A DNA stretch of 57,023 nucleotides, filler included, from Platydemus manokwari (taxonomy: Eukaryota): NCBI GenBank assembly GCA_037951405.1. It is 5 parts of 5 records of this genome, joined end to end, with 100 filler letters (N's around TTAATTAATTAA, not from the genome) between each part and the next. Parts side by side here need not be neighbours in the genome. Positions count along the whole stretch, not along the records: positions 1 to 14,668 come from JBBMOY011419200.1; 4 more parts are not named here. One strand, given 5' to 3'. The notes under the pieces were generated by a model, which was not told the origin of the DNA, did no database searches, and worked only from the letters and a program-made list of their open reading frames with translations. Shown here piece after piece: positions 1 through 13,700 of this stretch (its first letter is position 1; every line of letters starts with the position of its first letter). A program made the position numbers and the translations under genes.

Positions 1-2540
1 AATTATTACCATTCAAAATCTATAACCATTCTACAAAAGAAAGGCTACTCGGCTATCTCTAGCAACTCGTCAAACTCTCATTTCAGAACATCAAATGTAA
101 CTGCAATGTCTGCTTAAACCTTCTCTCGAAAGCATTGGATAGTCCCTTCAACTTAACAACTGACCAAATTGCACTACTGTCATCCGATCTACTATGCAAA
201 TCTCCAATCATCGGGGGCAAGGTCAAAAATAAAATGCGATCTCAGATTTCAGCCGAAAATTCAAGAGAAAGAACACCAACCCCTTCACATATGCACTCTA
301 CTTCTGTGCTCATACACCACTTGCTCCAAAACTGTCAATTCTGAGGTCAAAGAAAGGAAGAACTTCAAAACCTTTTTTTGCAATAAATTCAGTTACCAAA
401 CTTCAACAAAATACGTGCTTCTAATCACTCTCACAAGGCATATCTCAACCAATTAAAAAATTAGCTCAAACTCATCTTCACCCGCCATCAATTACCAATC
501 AATCAAACTCTCCTCCAGTCACAATACTCGTAGACAAAGAACAGCAAACTGATACCATACCATCCTCCATTACAACCAACCTTGAACAAGCACCCAATCA
601 CACTTCCATTTCATATCAAGTTGCTCCCCTGCACGATATGTCATTCATGTCTCTTATCGATGATCGTAATGCCCAGTGTAACTTATGCCAAAAGATCTAT
701 CGCTTTTCATTTACAAACTCATCAATTATCCTTAAGCATTTCCTACAAATTCACGATACCAATTGACCCCCTGAATGTGTTGTCCAATGTTACTGTGGTT
801 TCATCGGAGCACTAACACCCGTTTACCTGCATCTGAACCAGCACGAGACTGAAAACATACAATCAAACCAGTCAATTAAAAGCATTTCTTTAACCTTCGG
901 TCTCAAAGACTATCAAGCCCTTCAATCGAAGCCTATAAAACTGCCCAATTCCACTGACATCATTTTCATCAAATCGCAACTTGCAATCGCCATCATCAAC
1001 CAAGACTTCAAAACATTCTATCACTCTTCATTCGAGAAGTTTTCATCATGAAGAGTTGCGTCCTGGCTTATTCACTGGAATTGAAATCATTGGAACCTCT
1101 ACATCGCAGACTCGCTTAATTAAATTACATTCATTCAGCCACCTTCTTATTGAATGGACAAAAAAACTTTGTGGGCAAAGTTGGACAATCTCTTACAGAA
1201 TCTGCAGGCAGTAAAAGAAACCTTATCATTCCAAAAATTGTTAATAGTCAAAATTCCAAAGCAAATAAATTCAAATGACTGTGGGTTATTTGTCATTCAG
1301 TATGTTCTCGTCCATGCAACTGATTCTAATACATTTCATGCTGCAGTCCATCCACAGCTTCCGAGAAAATCAATCGAACTAATGCCAATATTCAATTCTT
1401 CCTCAAAGCATCAGTGAACCAGCTACAGTGCAAATGACGCATCAATTATTGTTGGAAGCTATCAAACTGCTAGAGATTGATTCTCCAGACCTCACAGAAA
1501 ACTATCTACAGCCAGAACAGCCTTGGCTGTCATCGAACCCTCTACAGTTGCCACGAAGAAACAAGGCAAACCTTCAGTATTACATTTCACCAGCCAAACA
1601 TCTTCATATTTGAAACTTCTCAATGAGCCCAAAAAATAATTAGAAATATTCTTTCGTCCTCAAAACCAACACCTCTGCCAACTTTGGAACGGATCCTAGC
1701 ACACTACATAATTCGAGCTACACCACTAATACTATCAGAATTCTCTTCTACTCTACTTCGGAACGAGGGTAACTCTAACCTCAAAGAAATCACAATGCAG
1801 AGATTGCAAACACATAAAAAATTGTCAAAATCATCAGCAAGTTCTGACGGCATAAAGTACAGAGATTGGAAGACTATAGATGCCGAGCATACTTTTCTGC
1901 TGGCTCTCTTCAACAAGATTCTTCGAACAAAAACAATAACAAATCAATGGGAATAATGCAATGGTAAACTCCTCCTTAAACTAGAAAAACACTCAACCTC
2001 ACACATTGTGTCCTCATAACACCGTAGAACTCTTCTGGACTCGATAGAAGCTGGAAATCTTCTCTGTCCCAATCAAAAGGCAATGTTCGCTTCTGACGAA
2101 TGTGCCGAACACAACGCCGACTTATTTGCCATATCTGAATACAAAATTAAACAGCATCAAAACTTGCACCTGTGCTGGAAAGATTTGAAAGAAGCTTTCC
2201 CAAGTATATCACATGACCTAATCTGGTATATTCTGGAGAAAATGGTATGAAACTTTTACTATGTTCAAATAATAAAAGAAAGAAATCCAGCACAAGAACT
2301 CCACCTATAGAAACCATCTATTCCCACTCACCGTGGTGCCAAACCAAGATGCCTACTACCTATGTACTTATTCTGCCTATCAATCAACTTCCTCATTAGG
2401 TCTTCTGCACAACTACCACATCCATTAACAATCTATCATAAGCAATTTTCCACCATAACATACACAAATGACATTGTCGTCTCTGGAGAAAATTTTGAAC
2501 AGAGATTCAATCGTCTCATCCACAATGCCGCTGACACCTT
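1..2540 (+). mobile_element. Degenerate non-LTR retrotransposon, R2/NeSL (RLE) group: decayed zinc finger, Ulp1-type protease and RT; truncated at the 3' end
   Basis: RT motifs occur in order through stops and frameshifts: SSASSDGIKYRDWK (~1830-1870), QKAMFASDECAEHN (~2075-2115), LCWKDLKEAFPSISHDLIW (~2170-2226), RGAKPRCLLPMYLFCLSIN (~2332-2388; GVKQGCPLSP-like) and TYTNDIVV (~2458-2481; YADD-like). A decayed C2H2-like FCNKFSYQTS...RH lies at ~375-442. The C/A-rich strand bias stops near 2540. Confidence 0.8.
1085..1320 (+). pseudogene. Ulp1/SENP (peptidase C48)-like domain of the retrotransposon ORF
   Basis: NHWNLYIAD (catalytic His, 1088-1090) and IPKQINSNDCGLFV (Gln/Cys motif QxNxxDCG) are in the same frame, separated by two in-frame stops (1121, 1151). 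Confidence 0.8.
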
Positions 2541-3363
2541 GTCATCGATACTTATTTGTGGTCAATTTTGATCGGCGACTTCTTGATTTCTGTAGACTTA
2601 AAAAACGTGAAAAATATCATTCATAGAAAGCAAGTGATTTCATTTTTAATGTTATCACCATTTTTATTGTCTTTAATATATAATACTATCTATATCTGTT
2701 TGGTCATAAAACTAAAGTTTCATTTGTTGCAGTAATAATTTAAAATAAATATTCCATCTTTATTTTTTCGATATGATAGTAATCGAGATTGATCAATTAC
2801 TGTGTTGGTGATAACTAATTAATATGTCATCATTTGGATTAAAATTCAGAATTATCATTAAAATAGTTTGCTTTCCAACTTTCAGACTCACACAGTGTTT
2901 GCTGTCGCGATTCAATGAATAATCATCAAAATGTTCTTTAAATAGAATGTTTACTTAAAACTAAAATAAGTATGTAACCATTTTTATAAAATATTTTGCA
3001 TATTAAAGAGACATACAATGCTTAATAAATTAGTAAAATCTTAAGTCAAAAATAATCTTTTTCAAAAAGTGAAAAATATTATTATGGTGAACAATTTAAA
3101 TATGTATTTATAAATTTAATAAATTATAAAATGAAGATTTATCGATTTAAGGCCGATTAGATAAATCCAATATAAATGTAATTATTAATTTTGTAATATT
3201 TCTATAAGTCGTTTTTTCTTAAAAATATTGTTTTATATATTCCTCAATTATGATTTGATGGATTTTAATCGATGGAGTTGTTTGATTGGATGTTTATCAA
3301 TATTTATAGTTTTTATTATTATCACAATTAATATTACAACTGTTATTATAACTCGATCATTAA

Positions 3364-3603
3364 ATGCATTTCCGAAAAGCCATTTTAATTATTATGCAAT
3401 TGGTTTTAATTTCTCAAATAGATGGATATCTAATGAAAGGACAAACTGATAAATCTAACTTCTTTTATAGATTCTTAAGAAGAATTTTTGGAAACTCTGT
3501 TGAAAGAACATATTTCCAACCTCCAATTTATCCGGAAAAGATTGAAGTTAAACAAATCTTGAAACCAACTGATAGTCCTGGAAATTCCATACGGTATGGA
3601 TAA
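3364..3603 (+). CDS. Secreted neuropeptide prohormone, C-terminal RY-amide (NKY-like candidate), 79 aa, single exon
   Basis: Signal-peptide-like MHFRKAILIIMQLVLISQIDG, a dibasic RR site, then a 38-aa peptide ending SPGNSIRY followed by Gly-stop (amidation donor). AATAAA lies 8 nt after the stop. Confidence 0.75.
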   Translation: MHFRKAILIIMQLVLISQIDGYLMKGQTDKSNFFYRFLRRIFGNSVERTYFQPPIYPEKIEVKQILKPTDSPGNSIRYG

Positions 3604-3611
3604 TGAGGAAC

Positions 3612-3617
3612 AATAAA
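3612..3617 (+). promoter_or_regulatory. Candidate polyadenylation signal of the prohormone gene
   Basis: AATAAA just after the stop, followed by T/G-rich sequence. The hexamer is common in this AT-rich background. Confidence 0.35.
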
Positions 3618-6252
3618 AATTAAACTTGTTGAATTATGTAAATAAAAATGTTTGTTTATTATATTTTTTATCAATATTGTATGTTAATTATATCATTTAT
3701 GTTGTTTTGACTTCTTTCTGTCATTAAATCTAGTATTCAAGTGATTTTCAAATATAAAATCTTTATTCACTTATTAAATCAAAATATTAAAATAAAATAA
3801 AGAAAATATTCAAATTAAAAATATCTTGAAATTTAAATCAAAATGTAACAAAAGTTTTGATGTAAATGAAATATTTAAAAATCATAACATTTCAAAAGTT
3901 ATCATTGTTTGATTATTTTAAAATAGAAAATTACATTGATAACTCAAAAATGAATAATCTGATCAATTGAATTTCAGATATTTTAAAGAATTGCTTATTA
4001 TGTGTTAACCCATTGATAAACAGTAAATTAATGAACAGTAAAATTTAAAATATAACTAAACCTTAAACAGTCATATTCAAACTTTATGAGTTGTGCGATC
4101 TACATCGATATAATATCACGTTCATTAAGATAAATAATGTGATAGATTCTATAAATGAATTCAATCAAAACATAATTCAGTAGTTATAATAAATAACACT
4201 AAATCTTGAATCTTAATGAAATCTTAATTATGAAATACCTTTTGGAAACTTATTCATATCTTAAATGTACAAAATAACGGTTATATAATATTATTGAAAA
4301 TCATCGATTGCGGTATCTTAGAACATGATATTTTTCAGTTCAATTCAATTAAGGTAAAAGACTATTCATCCAAGATACATCAGTGAATAGATTAACTCCC
4401 AAATCGGATAAGGTGAATGTGATCTAAAAAGCTAGATGGGAAAACCCGATTATTTACTTAATTTCCCATGAATTAAAAAAATATGTAAAAGTAATGATTT
4501 ATTTATGGTTGCGTCAGCTAAATATAAACAAAGTCGCTCATGAAGAAATGAAGATCAATCAAAAAATTAACGTATATCAATGATTGGTAACTGGTTCGTC
4601 TGTGCGTGTCATTATTAATTCTAAATAGGCTATCAGTTCTAATCAATTTTTATTGTAAGGAAAATGATGAAGTATAAAAAGTGGACATAGAAAAATAAAA
4701 ATGCGAATTTCACAATATAGAACTCTTGAAATTTGCGATTTTAATCAATAACAATTGTCTCATAAGAAAATCTATAACCAAATGGTGAAGGTAAATAGAA
4801 AAGTTATAAAATTGTAATGGAATAATAATCAATTAATTAGTCATGTATCAAAGAACTACAGCATTTACCATAATCAAATATAACAATAATAGGCCAGTAT
4901 ATAGAATAAATAAATATTTATGTTGGTCATTACAAATTACTATGACAGTCTCACCCATGATTTTTATTTGTGTTCGGATTAAGGAACAATTAGCGTTTCA
5001 TTTTCATTATTAATCGAAATGAATGCTCAATTTTAAATGCATTACAGACGGAAACTGTTTGACAAAAGATATTACGTAAACTGTACACTTGTCACCTTCA
5101 ATTTAGAATGAATTCTTTATTAAAATTTACCAATAAATATTCTATGGTATGATTTTCTCATAAAAAATTGAAAAACAAAGAATAAATTTCAATTCAAATA
5201 ATGAAAATATTATTGAGAACATTCTGACAATCTATTCAGTCGACCAATAGTTATCCGCTTATTGAAATTGGTGATAATTATAAATCAATTCAATTATGAT
5301 TAGATTTTATCGAAGACTGTTCTTTGAATATATTTTTTTAAAATGTTATAGAAGAAAACACTTGAAATTAAAAAAATTATTTTTGAAAGACCGTGTCTGC
5401 CATATCATTAACTTATTTCAAGAATTGTAAAATGACAAGATTTCTTCACGAAAATAAATTCATGAGAATGAAACTGATTGAAAGAAAATATTTAAAAATT
5501 TTCACATCAACTTATAAATTATATATCTAATATAAATTATAATGCAATTATGTGATTTCAAGTGTTCAAGTAATTTTCAGTCTTTAATGGTAAAGCTGGT
5601 GAAAACAATTGAAGAAATTTGATGATCTATCTATTCAATTATAAGGTTGAGATATAGATGAGTTAATTCCACCAATATCTGATTCTTAACAATATCGAAG
5701 CGCAGTTGTGGAAATTAATTTCGAAAAGAGGTTTGAGTAGCAAAAGATTTAGCGTTAATTTTGGATCGACTTATACCTTTTGGTGACGGTTGTCATAGTG
5801 GGAGAAAAAACCAAAGTATTTCAAAAATTCACAGTTAAAAATGAACAGAATATTGTAGGTGAAAAAAAATCCATGACTGTTAGTTTATTTGAGCAACGGA
5901 AGACAATGATTGATGAAAAAGAATAGGCGATATATATATATATATATATGCTAATCGAAAATTAACGTGACAAAGAGAAATTGACTCACAGAACATGGAA
6001 GCGATGTGGCAAACTAAAAGAAGGTTGGAGGAGCTGAAAAAGTAATAATGGGTTGGAGCGGATGAGAAACCACAAATTTTACAGTAGCTGGAAGGCATTG
6101 AGTGTCTATCTAGTTACCTACCAAACCAAAAGTTATTTCAAATCTCAATCAAAATCACGATGTAAAAACCTCAATCCAATCCAAATTGTTAATGATTATT
6201 ATTTTAAACTTTTCATTGAAATTTGATTAGTTTGATTATTGATACTTAGGTA

Positions 6253-6742
6253 TGTTACTATGTATAGTGTCTCTAATTAATAAAATAATAACTGAAGATA
6301 ACAATATTTTACAGAAAACAAAATACTCAATATAACTACGGACGGAAATCGCATTATCAAAAGTCAAATGAATAATCAACGCATGAATAATCAGCTCTGA
6401 AAGTTAAACAACGACCAAGATAACAACCATAAACACTCGTTATTAGAAAATCACGTAAGTGTCACAGAGATACTAAGTTAACGACCAAAAAGAATGACTT
6501 ATGTTCTTTGAGATCCAACTCCTTTTATAGACTTATCATGTGTGTTCACTTGATTTCTAAAGAACTTGCTTTCCGTTCTATAGAGCCGTTTACAGGTCAT
6601 ATTCTCAGTAAATTTTCTATTATCTCTATGATGAATTTCAATGTTTGTTGTTATTGTTGGTATGTCGCAATTGATTTCGCTTGATAATTTAAAAATACAA
6701 AAACGAAAAAATAAATAATATAATTAACGGTACAATGTAACA
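6253..6742. mobile_element. Possible solo LTR
   Basis: Bounded by TGTTAC...GTAACA. The internal part (~6475-6680) is visibly similar to ~35065-35270. No clean target-site duplication. Confidence 0.3.
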
Positions 6743-8604
6743 ATGAAAAGAATTGAATTTTAATAAATCTACATAAATCAACATTCATTACGCATTAAAT
6801 ATGGTTCATATTTTTAACTTAGTTTTTATAATTTTACAATGAATTCATTTAAATTATCTTAAAACCCTTAAATTCATATTTTCCTCTTTATTTTTATAAA
6901 TCGAGAAAGTGCGCCGGTTATTAAGAATCACACTAAGTTTGTTGTTTACTAATCTTGCAGAATAGTTGCTTTAACAATAGCTAGTAATGTTGTTTTATCA
7001 TAGATATATAAAATTGTACACTTAATCAATTTTGTTTTCATTTATATGATTAATTATTATGAAATATTATTCCTATCATATTTTAAAGAGTTTATCGACA
7101 CTAAATTATAAGGTCATTTAGTTATTGCAATAAAATAATTGTTTGGACTTATAAATAGTAATTTAAAAATTATTGGAACTTTTGTCATTAACAGACTTTT
7201 AGTCGTCAAGTTATCCTTGTATTAACCAAACGTATTAAAAAAATCATCTTATTAAATAGAAAACCGAATTATACAGTACTTTAAGATTAAGTTGTCTAAA
7301 TTATGTATCATTAATGAAACTAGGATCAAAAACCAATATATTTAATATTCAAACGTACTATTGAAATAGAAAAATTCATTTACAAATGCTTCCAGATAAA
7401 ATTGATGATCTTCATGATTTAAGTAGAAATAGATAGTTTCATGTATCTTATGTTTAATGTAACAGTGGAATTATTATCATTTCTAGATTTGATAATGGAA
7501 TAATTAATTTTCAAAAATGTCTAATGAGTTTTTTGTATGGTCAACGAATTATTATTATTAATTTAAGAAACATAATTGACTTAAAATTATTTATTCATAA
7601 GACTTAATTATTCAAAAAAGTACAACTCATTTTTCTAAGCAGATTGATTATACACAATTTGTATACCATTGTTAATCTGGTTTACAAATTCGCACTGTTT
7701 TTCATCAAAATAATTTTCAATTAACGAATTTTATATTGGTGATGTTTTTAAGTGTCTGAAAATTTAATTTATTAACGAACATAATGTTGTAATTCGACTG
7801 CAACTGGCATATGATCAGACATAATAAGATTCAAGATATTCCAACAACTACTTGCTGTACAACTATGTCAGAGTTTATTAACTCAGTACCCGGTGCTTTG
7901 TGAAATTTATCAAATTTTACCATGTAAGTAACTCATGAATAATATTTTTCCGTATTTACCAAGTGTGATTCATCTTAACAATGGTTGGCTATTCATAATT
8001 TATGAAAATCTTTAATCAATTATATTTTAATATTTATAACCTTAATCCATATTATAATTTTTATTTGGTCATGTTGTAAAAAGGCTAAATGGATATGTAT
8101 GTATAATGAAATAGGAGAAACCATTACAGTTATTATAATTACTCTTGGTTTTGTCTCCCAATTGAATGGTTATCTTATGGAAAATCAAAATAATAAATTT
8201 AAATATTTTTAAGATTATTAAGAAGCATTTTAAGGAAGTCCCAAACTACTTTGAACTACGAATATATTCTCAAAATATTGACGATCATTATATTTTTAAA
8301 CTTACTCAACATCTGGGAATTCAATCGTATGTGATTGAAAACAAATTAATGATACTGTTTTATAATCATACTAATTTATGTAATCATAGTTTTGTGTAAT
8401 GATATATATGTCAAGTATCATTTATATTTCAAGAAATATAAAAATATTGACCCTTTTATTGTGAAATTAAATATATAGTTCGAAAATAATTTTTGTATAG
8501 CCATGCAGAAAAGACAAATATTTAAAATTCATGATATGTTATTACAAATTTCAAATAAAATTATTTAAATTATTGTTTAATTATTATTAAATAATTCTAT
8601 TAAA

Positions 8605-10730
8605 CTATTAATTACATGGAATCTCCCAACAATACGAGATCAAGAAGATCTATGGAGGCTATTGTGTCAAAAATTCTACAACGTTTCTTGAGGAAAACCC
8701 ACAGTACGTGGTTATTATTTAATACCAGGAAATTGTTTTGTTGTGGTGAGCTTGGACACTGGAAGTTTGAACGCGAAAAATAAATTATATTCATGCAGAT
8801 AATGTCATTTAGCCAGAAAGTCTAGTTATAATAGTTCGAGCAAAATACTGTACATCCAGGACCAAGAAGATGGAACAGATATTCAAACAGAAATTGAAGC
8901 AAGTGATTATGTTAGCTCACTCTCCATGAATTAGAAAAAACTGGCATAAACCTCCTGTGCCTGTCTCGTCAGTAGAATAGAAGTAAAGAAGAAAGACCGC
9001 AAGAGGAAGAAGATCCATTCACAAATGTATCAGAAAGCAAATGGTAGACAGTGGAATAAAATTGAGTACAACACTACACATATTGAAATTTTATGGACTT
9101 CTGACGCATCGATAACAGTAATGAATGAGAACAATTAGAAGCGCGTTGGAGAGCAGCAGATTAAAAATTTTGATGTTTGATTGGCTGGTATATTCTCCAA
9201 TACACACAAATTCTGTCTAAAGAGAATAACGATCCTAGTACTTAGGAACTATAAAATTCTACTAAAGGAGATCATTGCAGTAAGAGAAATTTCATCAGGA
9301 TTTATCGGAGGAGTTGAAACGTTGAAGACTTGTGGAATATTCCTTGCGGAGATAGAATTAATTGATGCTAAGGATGTGGAAAAGTATTGATGATAAGAAT
9401 GATATTTCATTGAATAGGTGTGTAAAAGGTGTATAAATTTGTATTGAGACTCGGTTCGATTTGGGACTAATAGATTTAGTCACGCACGAGTTCCGAACAA
9501 AGTGGGGACCTATTGAGCAAAAAACCCCAGAATGCAACCAATAAATTTAGAAACCAAAATTCAAGAATTGATAGAAAATCTTCTTGAAAGTAATGTCATA
9601 ACGCCTTGCAAAAGCCCTTAGAACTAATCTTTGGTCATGGTTCCTAAGAAAGATGAATCTATCAGGATGTGCCTAGAGTTTAGAAAATTAAACAAACAGA
9701 CTGAGAAGTTTTCTTTTCCGTTTCCTGATATCCAAATGTTATTGGACTTGGTGTATGGATCGCAGGTTTCTCCACGATAGATTTAGGCCAAACATATTAT
9801 CAGGTCGAAATTGTGGAAGATTATAAGTTGATAACGGTGTTCAGAACTAGAACTAGGAAGTTCTATTTTAACAACTAACATTTGGACTATGTACTGCAAC
9901 GTTTGAGAGCCTAATGATTACGATTTTCAATAATTACGATCTTCAATCTTCCTAGGATTATGCAATTATTACAGACGATTTATCAAAGACTGCGCACTAA
10001 TTACGACTTCGTTATATGGAGTGGACTACAGAATGTGAGGAAAGTTTGAGAACCTAAAAGAATAATTATGCACAGCTCTAAGTTTGGCCTTTCTGGTTGA
10101 TTATAGATGATTTTAAACACCAACGCTAGTTTCGAAGCGATTAGCCACGATTTCAGCCAGTTGGTTGATACTAGAAAAGAGATGGTAATAGCTTATACTT
10201 CTAGAAATCTCAACAATGATAAAACAGGTTATTGCGTCACGAGAACGGAGCTTTTGGCAATCCACGAGTTCACTATGCATTTTAATCATTATCTGCAGGG
10301 AAAGAAATTTGTAACTCCCACTGATCACAAGGCCTTGACATATATGAAGAAAACTAACAACCGATTAGCCCTAAATTTCAAAGATGGTTTGTAAGCTTAT
10401 TCGTATTCAATTTCTTAACTTTAATATCGGAAGGGATCAGATAAAGGAAATACGGATGGACTCTTAAGTATAGGTGAAGCATTTTGTTCACAGTGTTTAA
10501 CTCAGCACCAAGGGCCTAAAGAAAACAAGCCAAAAAGGTCTGTTTATTAATGTTGTCGAGTATTCAATTGCAAATAATGACGAACTAAGAAAAATTCAAC
10601 AAGATGTTGTCATTGGTTCCATTCGAAAATTGTTACAGAAAACGGAAACAGAAGTTAATTCAGTCGACAAGAAAAGAAAATATTTTAACAGTTTAGAGAA
10701 ATACGAATTGTTTGACGATATGGCGGTGTA
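8605..10730 (+). mobile_element. Degenerate Ty3/Gypsy internal fragment (gag knuckle, protease, partial RT, RNase H)
   Basis: RKLFCCGELGHWKF knuckle (~8727), LWTSDASITVMN protease (~9091), IRMCLEFRKLNKQTEKFSFP and STIDLGQTYYQV RT motifs (~9660-9810), RNase H VIAYTSRNL...YCVTRTELLAI...TDHKAL (10107-10394). Many stops and frameshifts. Confidence 0.85.
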
Positions 10731-13700
10731 AAATGATTGTTGGGGTTTTGCAAAAATTAACAATTATAACAATATTATGGCAGAATTGACAATTTTGAAT
10801 GTATAAAGTATTACATGTATAATTTTTATAATTAGTTTGTAACTAAATTCATAATGTTTTCAGCAATAAAAATGTAGCGTTTATTGACACCTGATGTCAA
10901 TAAATTATTAATCGAAATGCTGAAAATGTTAAAATAGTTGTCGAGCACGGAGAAACTATTTTTTTATTTTTTTAATACATCGCATTGTAGTGATATGGTT
11001 TAATTTATTTTTCTATTTATGTTTAATATATCGCATTGTAACGATATAGTTTAATGTATCAATTTTATAATCGCATTGAAGAGATAAGTTTGTTACGTTC
11101 AGGAAGATTATAACTCAATATTATATTACGTAATAACATATATTTTAATATCTATCTTTTTTCGGTAAATTTAAAAGAAAATATATTTAATAATTTAAAA
11201 TGATAATAATTTCATGTCAAACAAAAACAATAGGAAATTTTAAATAATTCTTTTAAATAATTAATAAGGGACGTTTTTTCTAAAAATGGGATTTCAGTCC
11301 AAATATTCCATTAGGGATTCAATTTCAAGTTATCAAACAAATCATCCAGTATTCATTCGAGCCTCCGGCAATAATTATTGTTTCTCGTGCAGTACCAATA
11401 TTGTTCAAATGGTAAAAATTAGTTATTGTTTCGAACACTCGATATCATTCTCCGAAAGGAGATTTGTTATCAGTGAACATTAATTCCTCACAAAATCGTA
11501 ACAGAGTTTGTGAGTTTAAAATCACTGTTCCTTTAGTTTTCATACCGCAGTGGGGCGCCACTTAGTTCCCTCCGGCGGTTGTTATTTACTGATAAATCCT
11601 CAGAGCACAACAACTTCCTAACTTTAAAGCATCACACATTTGTTAATATTTACTATAATAAAGTATTGTTATCATATTATTGTTATTTTTATTCATATTA
11701 TTATATAACTCTCTACACACAACCTATTAATCTGTGAAGTCTCAGATATTGGTGGAAACACCAATCTCGAACCCACACCGTCTCACTTAAATACATAGTA
11801 ATTATCGGTTGAAAAATCGTTGATTTACTATTAAATAATCACCAACAAGTTTCCATCAATATTATCAAAAATGAATTGACACCAAAATTTGAAATAATTA
11901 TAATCTATTGATTAATTTGTGAAAATAATAATTTTAATACTTTATAATATAATAAATAATAATGTTTGACTCCATGACATGATTGTAAAAATAAACAAAA
12001 ATACGAATAAATTGGAAAACAAAAATGCAGAAAACAAACGTAGACGTGTAAATCAGGTAAACAAAAATGAAAAATTGAACTGAAATTTCGTGGTTTCATG
12101 TATTTATGAAATGCGGTAGGCCACACATCTAAACAAGAAAATTAATCACGCTACCATATTTTAATAGATTAATCTAATTTACTAAAATTTGACCAAGAAA
12201 CATTTATTGTTGATTTGTCAATATTATCTAAAAATTTAGTCGAAGCCCAAGTAATTGATTTATCATATTTTCTTCTAGTAACCTATTTTTGGAGTACAGC
12301 CCAAATACAAATAGCTCAGTATAAATATAAATCTCGAATTCATTCATAGTCTCCCATCTTCTAATCCCTTATTCAAACCCAGACCCACTATCCCTCAATG
12401 TGCCATGCCGAATCAACAGCGAAATTTAAATTTGACAATTATCAAAATTGTGGTATGATCAATTGAACATTTAACATTTGATTACGAGATCAATTTAATA
12501 TTTGATTTTTTGACATTTAATCACGATTGATTTTTGCAATAGATTTCCTATTATCGAAAAATTATTGTATATTTAATTAGATCATATATTTTTTTATTTA
12601 TGTACAAAAGAGATTGGAATTAATTGAAATGTAATGGCATAAGAAAGAAATAAATTTAAAGAAACAATAAATATAGAAAAATTAAGATATTGCGAAACAA
12701 ATAATACATAATAAGGCTCCAAAAATGCTAAAAATTATAATCAGAAAAAGAAGATTTACATAATTTAAGGCCGACAAATACGGCCACACGCGTAGCCTAT
12801 GCGTTAACAAGAGTATAAATAACTGAACCAAACATCAAAACCTCACACAAGATTTCGGACATAGTTTCTACTTTGAACTATAATTACCAATTTACAAATC
12901 ACAATTTCCGATAGTCGACACTCGACATAATTATTGATTGATAATCAATTCGGAGCAACATACATTGTATCTGCAAAAATTTATTTTTGATCGAGATTTC
13001 GATAATCAATTTGAAAGAACCTATATTTTATTCTCAAAGATGTAATCTTGATTGAGATTCACAAAATTTGAGGACAATTAATTTCTAACATGAGCGTATT
13101 GAAACAGCGAGATTATTAGGTATTTATAATCGTTATTTTATGCATCAATATCCCATAATCATTTATATAAATTTTAATATTACCATTACATTTTAATGAG
13201 AATTAAAATATTCCTATCTTCTCAGTTCGCTTGAACTCCCAATAATTCACTTTTATGAGGCATCGGACATTGAATTTATTGTTGTGTTATCTTTTATTGT
13301 TCGAAATATCCATATTTTCGTTTTCAAAAATAAGAAATTATAAATAGTAATTGCATAGTTATTCAACGATCAAAATATGGCCTAAATAACCATCGAGTTA
13401 TTAATAAAATCTTATTTAGACAAGTTGTAATTGTTCAGATTCAATTCTTGACCATTATATTAAATTTTAAATTAACACATTTAGATAATTGTTGTCTACA
13501 GTGTGGTCTTCTAAGCCCAACAAGAACCAAAACCCTAACATATTCAATACTATTTAAATATACGGTCCTAAATTACAAAAGAAATATAACCAACCACTTA
13601 ATGAAAGACGCGAAAGTCTGGGCAATATTGAAACTACATAATTAATAATTAGAAATAAAAGAAACTGTATAGGTCATTGTGTGCGGTTGAAGTGTCTTCT

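What the first reader, a model, noticed from the sequence alone, without database searches (positions are those of the whole stretch)
3364..3603. Small single-exon prohormone with a 38-aa RY-amide peptide: NKY-like neuropeptide candidate
Seen: signal peptide, RR site, then IFGNSVERTYFQPPIYPEKIEVKQILKPTDSPGNSIRY-G-stop, plus a polyA signal. It is the only clean host-like ORF in about 20 kb of decayed transposon DNA. Known: a terminal Gly is the PAM amidation donor. Lophotrochozoan NKY peptides are long (~40 aa), carry an N-terminal aromatic-x-P motif and end in hydrophobic-RY-amide, whereas NPY/NPF end RxRF/Y-amide, which this peptide lacks. Inferred (from recalled annelid NKY sequences): YFQP and PGNSIRYa fit NKY. 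An alternative monobasic cut (VER|TYF) would give a 30-aa peptide. A 79-codon gene like this is easily missed by annotation pipelines.
Basis: partly seen in the sequence, partly recalled or inferred. Interest (0 to 1): 0.75.

Follow-up and report, generated by a model that had tools for sequence, protein, structure and literature searches.

The report
Probable small RY-amide prohormone gene
A 79-codon reading frame in very AT-rich, transposon-littered DNA has the layout and base composition of a real gene for a secreted, amidated signalling peptide, but no transcript or relative could be found, and its link to the NKY peptide family is only suggestive.

Summary
The ORF is exactly as described: 3364-3603 (+), 79 aa. 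It has a hydrophobic N-terminus, an RR site, then a 38-aa peptide ending IRY-Gly-stop.

Its length alone means nothing: 27-72% of dinucleotide shuffles give an equally long open frame. Other features are not chance-like:
- It is a sharp GC island (0.30 against 0.18 in the flanks, falling to 0.12 just after the stop).
- GC1/GC2/GC3 is 36/31/21%.
- G/A/R/P residues are twice the null level.
- In 40 Mb of simulated local-composition DNA, no ORF combined a signal-peptide-like start, a dibasic site and an R[FY]G end.
- A precursor ending RYG-stop is documented by mass spectrometry in a planarian (Smed NPP-4).

Against it:
- No homologue among 1.84 billion representative proteins, and no Pfam hit.
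- The only public run that holds the DNA is genomic, so expression is untested.

NKY membership is weak. The position, length and hydrophobic-RY-amide end fit. A YFQ...P..IEVK stretch lines up with the NKY-1 FWQ...PL.VETK stretch. However, the published core motif, the conserved Trp, the Gly run, the N-terminal Lys and the long spacer are all absent. NPY/NPF membership fails.

Verdict: probably a real small prohormone gene (about 0.5). NKY orthology about 0.2.

The parts
3364..3603 (+). Complete 79-codon ORF including the TAA stop; candidate prepropeptide in a single coding exon
   Evidence: GC 0.30 against 0.18 in the flanks; GC1/2/3 = 36/31/21%.
3364..3426 (+). Predicted signal peptide (residues 1-17 or 1-21): MHFRK, a hydrophobic run, then cleavage after S17 or G21
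   Evidence: Crude n/h/c-region and (-3,-1) test passed; only 2.4% of null ORFs pass it. AF2 helix at residues 2-23, pLDDT about 80. SignalP was not available.
3427..3477 (+). Short N-terminal spacer peptide (residues 22-38)
   Evidence: Read directly from the sequence. AF2 models a short helix at residues 33-42.
3478..3483 (+). Dibasic RR, the putative prohormone-convertase site (residues 39-40)
   Evidence: AGA AGA read. That it is cleaved is inferred, not shown.
3484..3597 (+). Predicted 38-aa mature peptide ending S-I-R-Y
   Evidence: AF2 models it as coil with low confidence.
3511..3552 (+). YFQPPIYPEKIEVK stretch (residues 50-63), loosely parallel to the NKY-1 stretch FWQ..GGPL.VETK
   Evidence: Compared by eye with NKY precursors from Thiel et al. 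2021. A relaxed residue-class motif occurs in 4e-4 of shuffles of the peptide and in 0 of 2810 null ORFs. The motif was defined post hoc. The strict published core is not met.
3598..3603 (+). Gly79 (putative amidation donor) followed directly by the TAA stop
   Evidence: GGA TAA read. Planarian NPP-4 ends QSVFRYG-stop and its amidated peptide was seen by MS.
3612..3646 (+). Two AATAAA hexamers (3612-3617 and 3641-3646), possible poly(A) signals
   Evidence: 8 AATAAA in 2019 nt on this strand, so one near the stop has roughly a 15% chance. Weak support only.

Best explanation
The ORF is most likely a real small gene, with a single coding exon, for a 79-aa secretory prepropeptide. The inferred steps are as follows. 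The N-terminal signal peptide is removed after S17 or G21. A prohormone convertase cuts after R39-R40 and carboxypeptidase trims the basic residues. Peptidylglycine alpha-amidating monooxygenase uses Gly79 to amidate Tyr78. The product is a 38-aa peptide ending Ser-Ile-Arg-Tyr-amide. Shorter forms are possible if R48 or K63 are used as monobasic sites; the K63 cut would give a 15-aa peptide starting with Gln. By analogy with other hydrophobic-RY/RF-amides (sNPF and NKY types), it would signal through an sNPF/NKY-type rhodopsin-family GPCR. What is shown: the ORF, its layout, its coding-like composition and the rarity of the combination. What is inferred: expression, processing, amidation and the receptor.
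For: (1) All features are present at the stated coordinates. (2) The ORF is a compositional island that coincides with its own boundaries: GC 0.30 against 0.18, falling to 0.12 in the first 60-nt window after the stop, and AT runs of 6 or more cover 23% of the ORF against about 50% of the flanks. (3) It has the largest GC contrast of all 55 open frames of 55 or more codons in the piece, and GC12-GC3 is +0.127. (4) Under Markov nulls, P(contrast) is 0.001-0.002, P(GC12-GC3) is 0.006-0.011 and the joint probability is at most 5e-4. (5) G/A/R/P residues are 21.5% against a null of 9.6 +/- 3.6% (P = 0.004). (6) In 40 Mb of null sequence there were 9163 ATG-ORFs of 60-150 aa. Of these 2.4% were signal-peptide-like, 2.2% ended in Gly and one ended in R[FY]G. 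Three combined a signal-peptide-like start, a dibasic site and a Gly end, and none of these ended in R[FY]G. Multiplying the separate rates gives about 0.5 such ORFs per Gb. (7) Only one other R[FYW]G+basic/stop occurs in all six frames of the piece, and it has just 24 open codons upstream. (8) Precursors ending RYG-stop or RFG-stop, with the amidated product seen by MS, are documented in Schmidtea mediterranea NPP-4 and NPP-3. One nemertean NKY-2 also ends LMRYG-stop.
Against: No homologue was found by any search: word-indexed search, phmmer against 1.84 billion representatives with 0 hits at E<=1e-3, metagenome loci and Pfam at E<=10. There is no expression evidence. The only public run holding the DNA has uniform depth of about 15 across ORF and transposon remnants alike, so it is genomic DNA. 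ORF length is not significant. AT-rich DNA readily encodes Ile/Leu/Phe-rich starts and Lys/Arg pairs. The Markov null is homogeneous, so real genomes with decayed genes and transposons will yield more false candidates. Four upstream ATGs lie within 115 nt of the start, and position -3 is T. The candidate is absent from the published S. mediterranea prohormone tables. The scan read very many windows, so rare chance events are expected somewhere.
Confidence: 0.5

Rival explanations
1. It is a chance or non-functional ORF: an open frame in AT-rich intergenic DNA that happens to resemble a prohormone and was picked out because the scan looked at very many windows.
For: Open frames of 79 or more codons are common in shuffles (27.5% for 2 kb, 72% for 6.4 kb). 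No homologue was found and no RNA evidence exists. A second, clearly chance-like 86-codon open frame overlaps the start. Upstream ATGs and a weak start context are present. AATAAA is frequent here.
Against: The GC island coincides with the ORF and has a sharp 3' edge at the stop. The joint compositional P is at most 5e-4 under the null. GARP enrichment has P = 0.004. The feature combination is expected only about 0.5 times per Gb. An extra NKY-like internal stretch, not used to select the ORF, is also present.
Confidence: 0.3
2. It is a relic: the last exon or a retro-copied fragment of a once-functional gene (host or transposon-borne) that keeps a coding-like composition but is no longer expressed.
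For: Coding-like composition persists for a long time after inactivation. The neighbourhood is decayed mobile-element DNA: a Ulp1/C48 piece at 1154-1414 and an RT_RNaseH piece at 10107-10391. A lack of introns would suit a retro-copy. Depth cannot separate unique genes from old transposon copies, since both lie at about 15.
Against: The frame is intact from ATG to stop with every processing element in place. The known transposon remnants in the piece have 33-41% GC and no GC12>GC3 bias. No Pfam or transposon-protein similarity was found.
Confidence: 0.1
3. It is a real secreted small protein or peptide but not a neuropeptide, for example a gland, mucus or defence product. In that case the RR and Gly-stop are not used for convertase cleavage and amidation.
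For: Only the signal peptide and coding-like composition are supported by statistics. Processing is inferred. AF2 predicts no fold beyond two helices.
Against: An R[FY]G end is very rare by chance (1 of 9163 null ORFs) and is the hallmark of RF/RY-amide precursors. The peptide has no Cys and no repeats.
Confidence: 0.1

Closest known systems
Lophotrochozoan neuropeptide KY (NKY-1), e.g. phoronid and nemertean precursors in Thiel et al. 2021 (PMC8557429, Suppl. 1); consensus in De Oliveira et al. 2019 (PMC6425005)
   Same: There is one long peptide (35-43 aa; 38 here, and 38 in oysters, PMC4200219) at the extreme C-terminus of the precursor after a dibasic site. It ends hydrophobic-R-Y-Gly. An aromatic-aromatic-Gln start is followed, at the same spacing as in Phoronopsis, by P-x-x-[IV]-E-x-[KR].
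   Different: The conserved Trp is absent (Phe in its place). The Gly run, the Leu after Pro and the FGS segment are absent. The published core FW[RQ]P[LM]G[YG] matches at only 3 of 7 positions. There is no N-terminal Lys. Eight extra residues lie between RR and the motif. The spacer is 17 aa instead of about 60-110. There is no basic residue after Gly. No similarity is detectable by phmmer.
Planarian sNPF-like precursors Smed-NPP-3 and NPP-4 (Collins et al. 2010, PMC2953531, Tables S3 and S5)
   Same: These are small precursors whose last peptide ends RYG-stop or RFG-stop. The amidated QSVFRY-amide and AILLTRY-amide were confirmed by MS. A hydrophobic residue precedes RY.
   Different: Their peptides are 6-7 aa and flanked by KR sites. 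The candidate has no dibasic site near its C-terminus and would yield a 38-aa peptide, or 15 aa after a monobasic cut. No wider sequence similarity exists, and the candidate's strings are absent from those tables.
NPY/NPF family (flatworm npy genes, Collins et al. 2010)
   Same: The peptide is about 36-39 aa, has a Pro-rich N-terminal part and a C-terminal aromatic amide.
   Different: There is no RxR[FY] (it is S-I-R-Y). There is no intron in the Arg codon (CGG TAT GGA is contiguous, whereas describes that intron in ten of the S. mediterranea npy genes). No long amphipathic helix is predicted. No Tyr is present at positions -10 and -17 from the C-terminus; that criterion is from my own recollection of the flatworm NPF literature.

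Membership tests
Amidated neuropeptide prohormone (generic) | N-terminal signal peptide | tested here: met
   The crude n/h/c-region and (-3,-1) test is passed; 2.4% of null ORFs pass it. AF2 models a helix at residues 2-23. SignalP itself was not available.
Amidated neuropeptide prohormone (generic) | Basic cleavage site plus C-terminal Gly as amidation donor | tested here: met
   RR at residues 39-40 and Gly79-stop. The combination with a signal-peptide-like start occurs 3 times in 40 Mb of null sequence, and never with an R[FY]G end.
Amidated neuropeptide prohormone (generic) | Expression in peptidergic cells and a processed product | not testable with these tools
   Only one public run holds the DNA, and it is genomic.
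NKY | Single long peptide at the C-terminal end of the precursor, ending hydrophobic-RY-Gly | tested here: met
   A 38-aa peptide ending S-I-R-Y-G-stop. NKY ends include PFRYGRK, PMRYGK, VIRWGRR and LMRYG-stop.
NKY | Published core motif FW[RQ]P[LM]G[YG] (NKY-1) or G[YF]WIWMPAQG (NKY-2) | tested here: not met
   The regex test is false. The candidate has YFQPPIY, which matches 3 of 7 exactly, with no Trp and no Gly (for the consensus).
NKY | Diagnostic N-terminal Lys of the peptide | tested here: not met
   The peptide starts with Ile after RR, or with Thr after R48. The feature is described.
NKY | G(G)PL-x-[VI]-E-T-[KR] segment after the aromatic motif | tested here: inconclusive
   The candidate has P-E-K-I-E-V-K at the same spacing as Phoronopsis but lacks Gly and Leu. 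The relaxed combined motif occurs in 4e-4 of shuffles and 0 of 2810 null ORFs. It was defined after seeing the candidate.
NKY | Long N-terminal spacer (precursor about 110-170 aa) | tested here: not met
   The precursor is 79 aa with a 17-aa spacer, compared with the precursors.
NKY | Detectable sequence homology to family members | tested here: not met
   phmmer against 1.84 billion representatives gave 0 hits at E<=1e-3.
NPY/NPF | C-terminal RxR[FY]-amide | tested here: not met
   The C-terminus is N-S-I-R-Y-Gly.
NPY/NPF | Intron within the codon of the penultimate Arg | tested here: not met
   ATA CGG TAT GGA TAA is contiguous in the genome. The feature is described.
sNPF-type (flatworm NPP-3/4-like) | Short (about 6-12 aa) peptides ending [LFMT]-R-[FY]-amide, flanked by dibasic sites | tested here: inconclusive
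   The C-terminal I-R-Y-Gly-stop matches the end and the Gly-stop architecture of NPP-4 and NPP-3. The nearest dibasic site is 38 residues upstream; only the monobasic K63 and K67 lie nearer.

The most novel reading that the evidence does not exclude
The ORF is the strongly shortened and diverged orthologue of lophotrochozoan NKY in an AT-rich genome. It would keep only the aromatic-aromatic-Gln start, the P..IE.K stretch and the hydrophobic-RY-amide end. It could be a missing ligand for orphan sNPF/NKY-type receptors, such as the planarian NPYR7-10 group that assigns to the sNPF type.
Probability: 0.2. Interest if true: 0.6.

Novelty: new member of a known kind. Interest (0 to 1): 0.45.

Why it matters
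If real, this is an unannotated gene for an RY-amide signalling peptide. It lies in repeat-rich DNA and is too short and too diverged for homology-based annotation. It would add a candidate ligand for the sNPF/NKY receptor group, whose natural ligands in lophotrochozoans are still debated. It would also show that composition contrast plus processing-site grammar can recover such genes from raw sequence. If the host is a flatworm and the NKY link holds, NKY would extend beyond polyclads within that phylum. If it is not expressed, it is a useful example of how closely AT-rich DNA can imitate a prohormone.

Tried and rejected
- **Homology searches with the 79-aa protein:** all blank.
- **Identifying the organism:** a word search with the RT_RNaseH piece and an exact look-up were both blank. 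Rfam found nothing in the piece.
- **RNA evidence:** no RNA run holds the stretch, and the single holder is genomic.
- **Literature string searches for the peptide:** blank. One search for IRY-amide returned only irrelevant word matches. A search for the parasitic-flatworm neuropeptide survey did not find it. The polyclad NKY1 sequence is not in the held supplement.
- **ORF length as evidence:** rejected after shuffling.
- **Single-copy depth as evidence:** rejected, because the transposon remnants have the same depth.
- **AATAAA as evidence:** judged weak.
- **NPY/NPF reading:** rejected.
- **Internal repeats or paralogues in the piece:** none.
- scoring the candidate against an HMM or profile of NKY peptides. 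Only short published or PROSITE-style motifs were used.

Full report
**Observation.** It runs from ATG at 3364 to TAA at 3601-3603 on the + strand and has 79 codons.
- An in-frame TAA sits directly upstream (3361-3363), so the ATG is the first codon of the open frame.
- The product begins MHFRK, followed by an uncharged hydrophobic run and small residues at S17 and G21.
- RR is at residues 39-40 (3478-3483).
- A 38-aa stretch follows (window:3484-3597:+), ending S-I-R-Y. Then comes Gly79 and the stop.
- AATAAA occurs at 3612 and 3641.

**Is it more than chance?** ORF length is not evidence. Dinucleotide-preserving shuffles of the 2-kb block 2776-4794 give an open frame of at least 79 codons in 27.5% of cases, and shuffles of 2601-9000 do so in 72%. 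A second, T-rich 86-codon open frame (3189-3449) overlaps the start and looks like chance.

Composition is different.
- The ORF has GC 0.30 against 0.18-0.19 on both sides. GC falls from 0.37 to 0.12 in the first 60-nt window after the stop. Runs of six or more A/T cover 23% of the ORF against about 50% of the flanks.
- GC at codon positions 1, 2 and 3 is 36, 31 and 21%. Third positions therefore sit at the background level while positions 1 and 2 are raised. This is the pattern expected of coding sequence in an AT-rich genome.
- Among all 55 open frames of 55 or more codons in the piece, this one has the largest GC contrast with its flanks, and it is among the highest for GC12-GC3.
- In third-order Markov simulations, open frames of 70 or more codons reach this contrast with P = 0.001-0.002 and this positional asymmetry with P = 0.006-0.011. 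The joint probability is at most 5e-4.
- Gly/Ala/Arg/Pro residues make up 21.5% against 9.6 +/- 3.6% in null ORFs (P = 0.004).

**Feature grammar.** I simulated 40 Mb of sequence with the local composition and found 9163 ATG-ORFs of 60-150 aa.
- 2.4% passed the same crude signal-peptide test that the candidate passes.
- 2.2% ended in Gly, optionally followed by basic residues.
- One ended in R[FY]G.
- Three combined a signal-peptide-like start, a dibasic site and a Gly end. None of these ended in R[FY]G.

Multiplying the separate rates gives roughly 0.5 such ORFs per Gb. In the real piece the only other R[FYW]G followed by a basic residue or stop has 24 open codons upstream and lies in a transposon remnant. 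The null is homogeneous, so true false-positive rates will be somewhat higher. The scan also read many windows. Even so, the combination is rarer than plausible numbers of real RF/RY-amide genes.

**What could not be obtained.**
- No relative was found: the word-indexed search, phmmer against 1.84 billion cluster representatives (0 hits at E<=1e-3), back-translated pattern scans of metagenome contigs and Pfam at E<=10 were all blank. The exact protein is not on record. The window's own transposon pieces also found nothing, so this organism and its kin are probably poorly covered by those collections. The blanks therefore weigh little.
- Expression is untested. Only one public run holds the DNA. 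Its contigs cover ORF and transposon remnants alike at a depth of about 15, so it is a genomic library.
- The organism is unknown to me.

**Context.**
- The piece is repeat-derived around the ORF. There is a Ulp1/Peptidase_C48 fragment at 1154-1414 with a weak zf-BED at 425-763, in a 38-39% GC block with a strong C-over-G skew. There is an RT_RNaseH fragment at 10107-10391.
- No Rfam families, LTR pairs or internal repeats were found.
- Upstream of the ATG there is a TATATA at 3234. Four upstream ATGs lie at 3250-3290, and position -3 is T. A real mRNA would need a transcription start or trans-splice acceptor downstream of about 3292. This is unresolved.

**Mechanism (inferred).**
1. The signal peptide is removed.
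2. A convertase cuts at RR and carboxypeptidase trims the basic residues.
3. Tyr78 is amidated from Gly79, giving a 38-aa S-I-R-Y-amide peptide.
4. Monobasic cuts at R48 or K63 could give shorter forms.

AlphaFold2, run on the single sequence, shows only helices at 2-23 and 33-42, with low-confidence coil over the mature peptide. This fits a flexible peptide hormone and gives no hint of a PP-fold.

The Gly-stop architecture has precedent. In Schmidtea mediterranea, NPP-4 ends QSVFRYG-stop and NPP-3 ends AIVLTRFG-stop. Amidated QSVFRY-amide (NPP-4) and AILLTRY-amide (NPP-3) were detected by mass spectrometry (PMC2953531). One nemertean NKY-2 ends LMRYG-stop.

**Comparison with NKY.** The published definition is an N-terminal Lys, a C-terminal Tyr, and a core of FW[RQ]P[LM]G[YG] (NKY-1) or G[YF]WIWMPAQG (NKY-2). 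Peptides are up to 43 aa, and 38 aa in oysters. Real precursors (PMC8557429 Suppl. 1) read as follows: signal peptide, a spacer of 60-110 aa, KK, x-FW[QP]..G(G)PL.[VI]ET[KR]..FGS.., then [FML]RYG[KR]-stop.

What the candidate shares:
- the C-terminal position of one long peptide;
- the length of that peptide;
- the hydrophobic-RY-Gly end;
- the stretch Y-F-Q-P-P-I-Y-P-E-K-I-E-V-K, which lines up with Phoronopsis F-W-Q-S-I-G-G-P-L-S-V-E-T-K at identical spacing (aromatic pair, Q, P, [IV]E, K).

A residue-class motif that captures this stretch occurs in 4e-4 of shuffles of the peptide and in 0 of 2810 null ORFs. I wrote that motif after seeing both sequences, so the figures overstate the support.

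What the candidate lacks:
- the strict core motifs, which fail;
- the near-invariant Trp, the Gly run, the Leu after Pro and the FGS segment;
- the N-terminal Lys;
- a long spacer: the candidate's spacer is 17 aa, and eight extra residues separate RR from the motif;
- any hit by phmmer.

NKY orthology is therefore possible but weak, at about 0.2.

**Other families.**
- NPY/NPF is rejected. There is no RxR[FY]. The codons CGG TAT GGA are contiguous, whereas NPY genes carry an intron in the Arg codon. No long helix is predicted.
- An sNPF-type reading (as for NPP-3 and NPP-4) fits the C-terminus and the Gly-stop, but not the absence of a nearby dibasic site.
- The candidate's strings are absent from the S. 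mediterranea prohormone tables.

**Verdict.** I give about 0.5 to a real small RY-amide prohormone gene and about 0.3 to a chance or non-functional ORF. The remaining 0.2 is split between a relic exon and a secreted non-neuronal peptide. The NKY label is a lead, not a classification. The candidate is worth a transcript check, which would settle most of the question.

Noticed in passing
window 1-2600: A block of 38-39% GC with a strong C-over-G skew on the + strand (GC skew -0.24 to -0.42) and many 76-113-codon open frames. It contains a Ulp1/Peptidase_C48 fragment (1154-1414, E = 1.9e-5) and a weak zf-BED match (425-763). It looks like a decayed DNA-transposon-like element.
   Followed up: partly
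window 10107-10391: An RT_RNaseH domain fragment (E = 1.3e-19), the remnant of an LTR-retrotransposon pol gene. No LTR pair is present within the piece.
   Followed up: partly
window 3115-3171 and 5486-5828: In the one public run, a contig joins 5828 back to 3115 with CACT between them. Several contigs end with loose ends at 3132, 3171, 5486 and 5807. This suggests edges of a short dispersed repeat about 200-250 nt upstream of the ORF.
   Followed up: no
window 3189-3449: A T-rich 86-codon open frame (73 aa from a TTG start at 3228) overlaps the start of the candidate in another frame. Its GC is 0.225, it shows no contrast with its flanks and it has no Pfam hit, so it is probably chance.
   Followed up: partly
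window 10957-11059 and 12940-13059: Two short tandem duplications: 51 bp x 2.1 and 61 bp x 2.0.
   Followed up: no
window 2128-2136 (- strand): The only other R[FY]G-basic string in six frames (FRYGK-stop). It has just 24 open codons upstream and lies inside the transposon-like block, so it is judged to be chance.
   Followed up: yes
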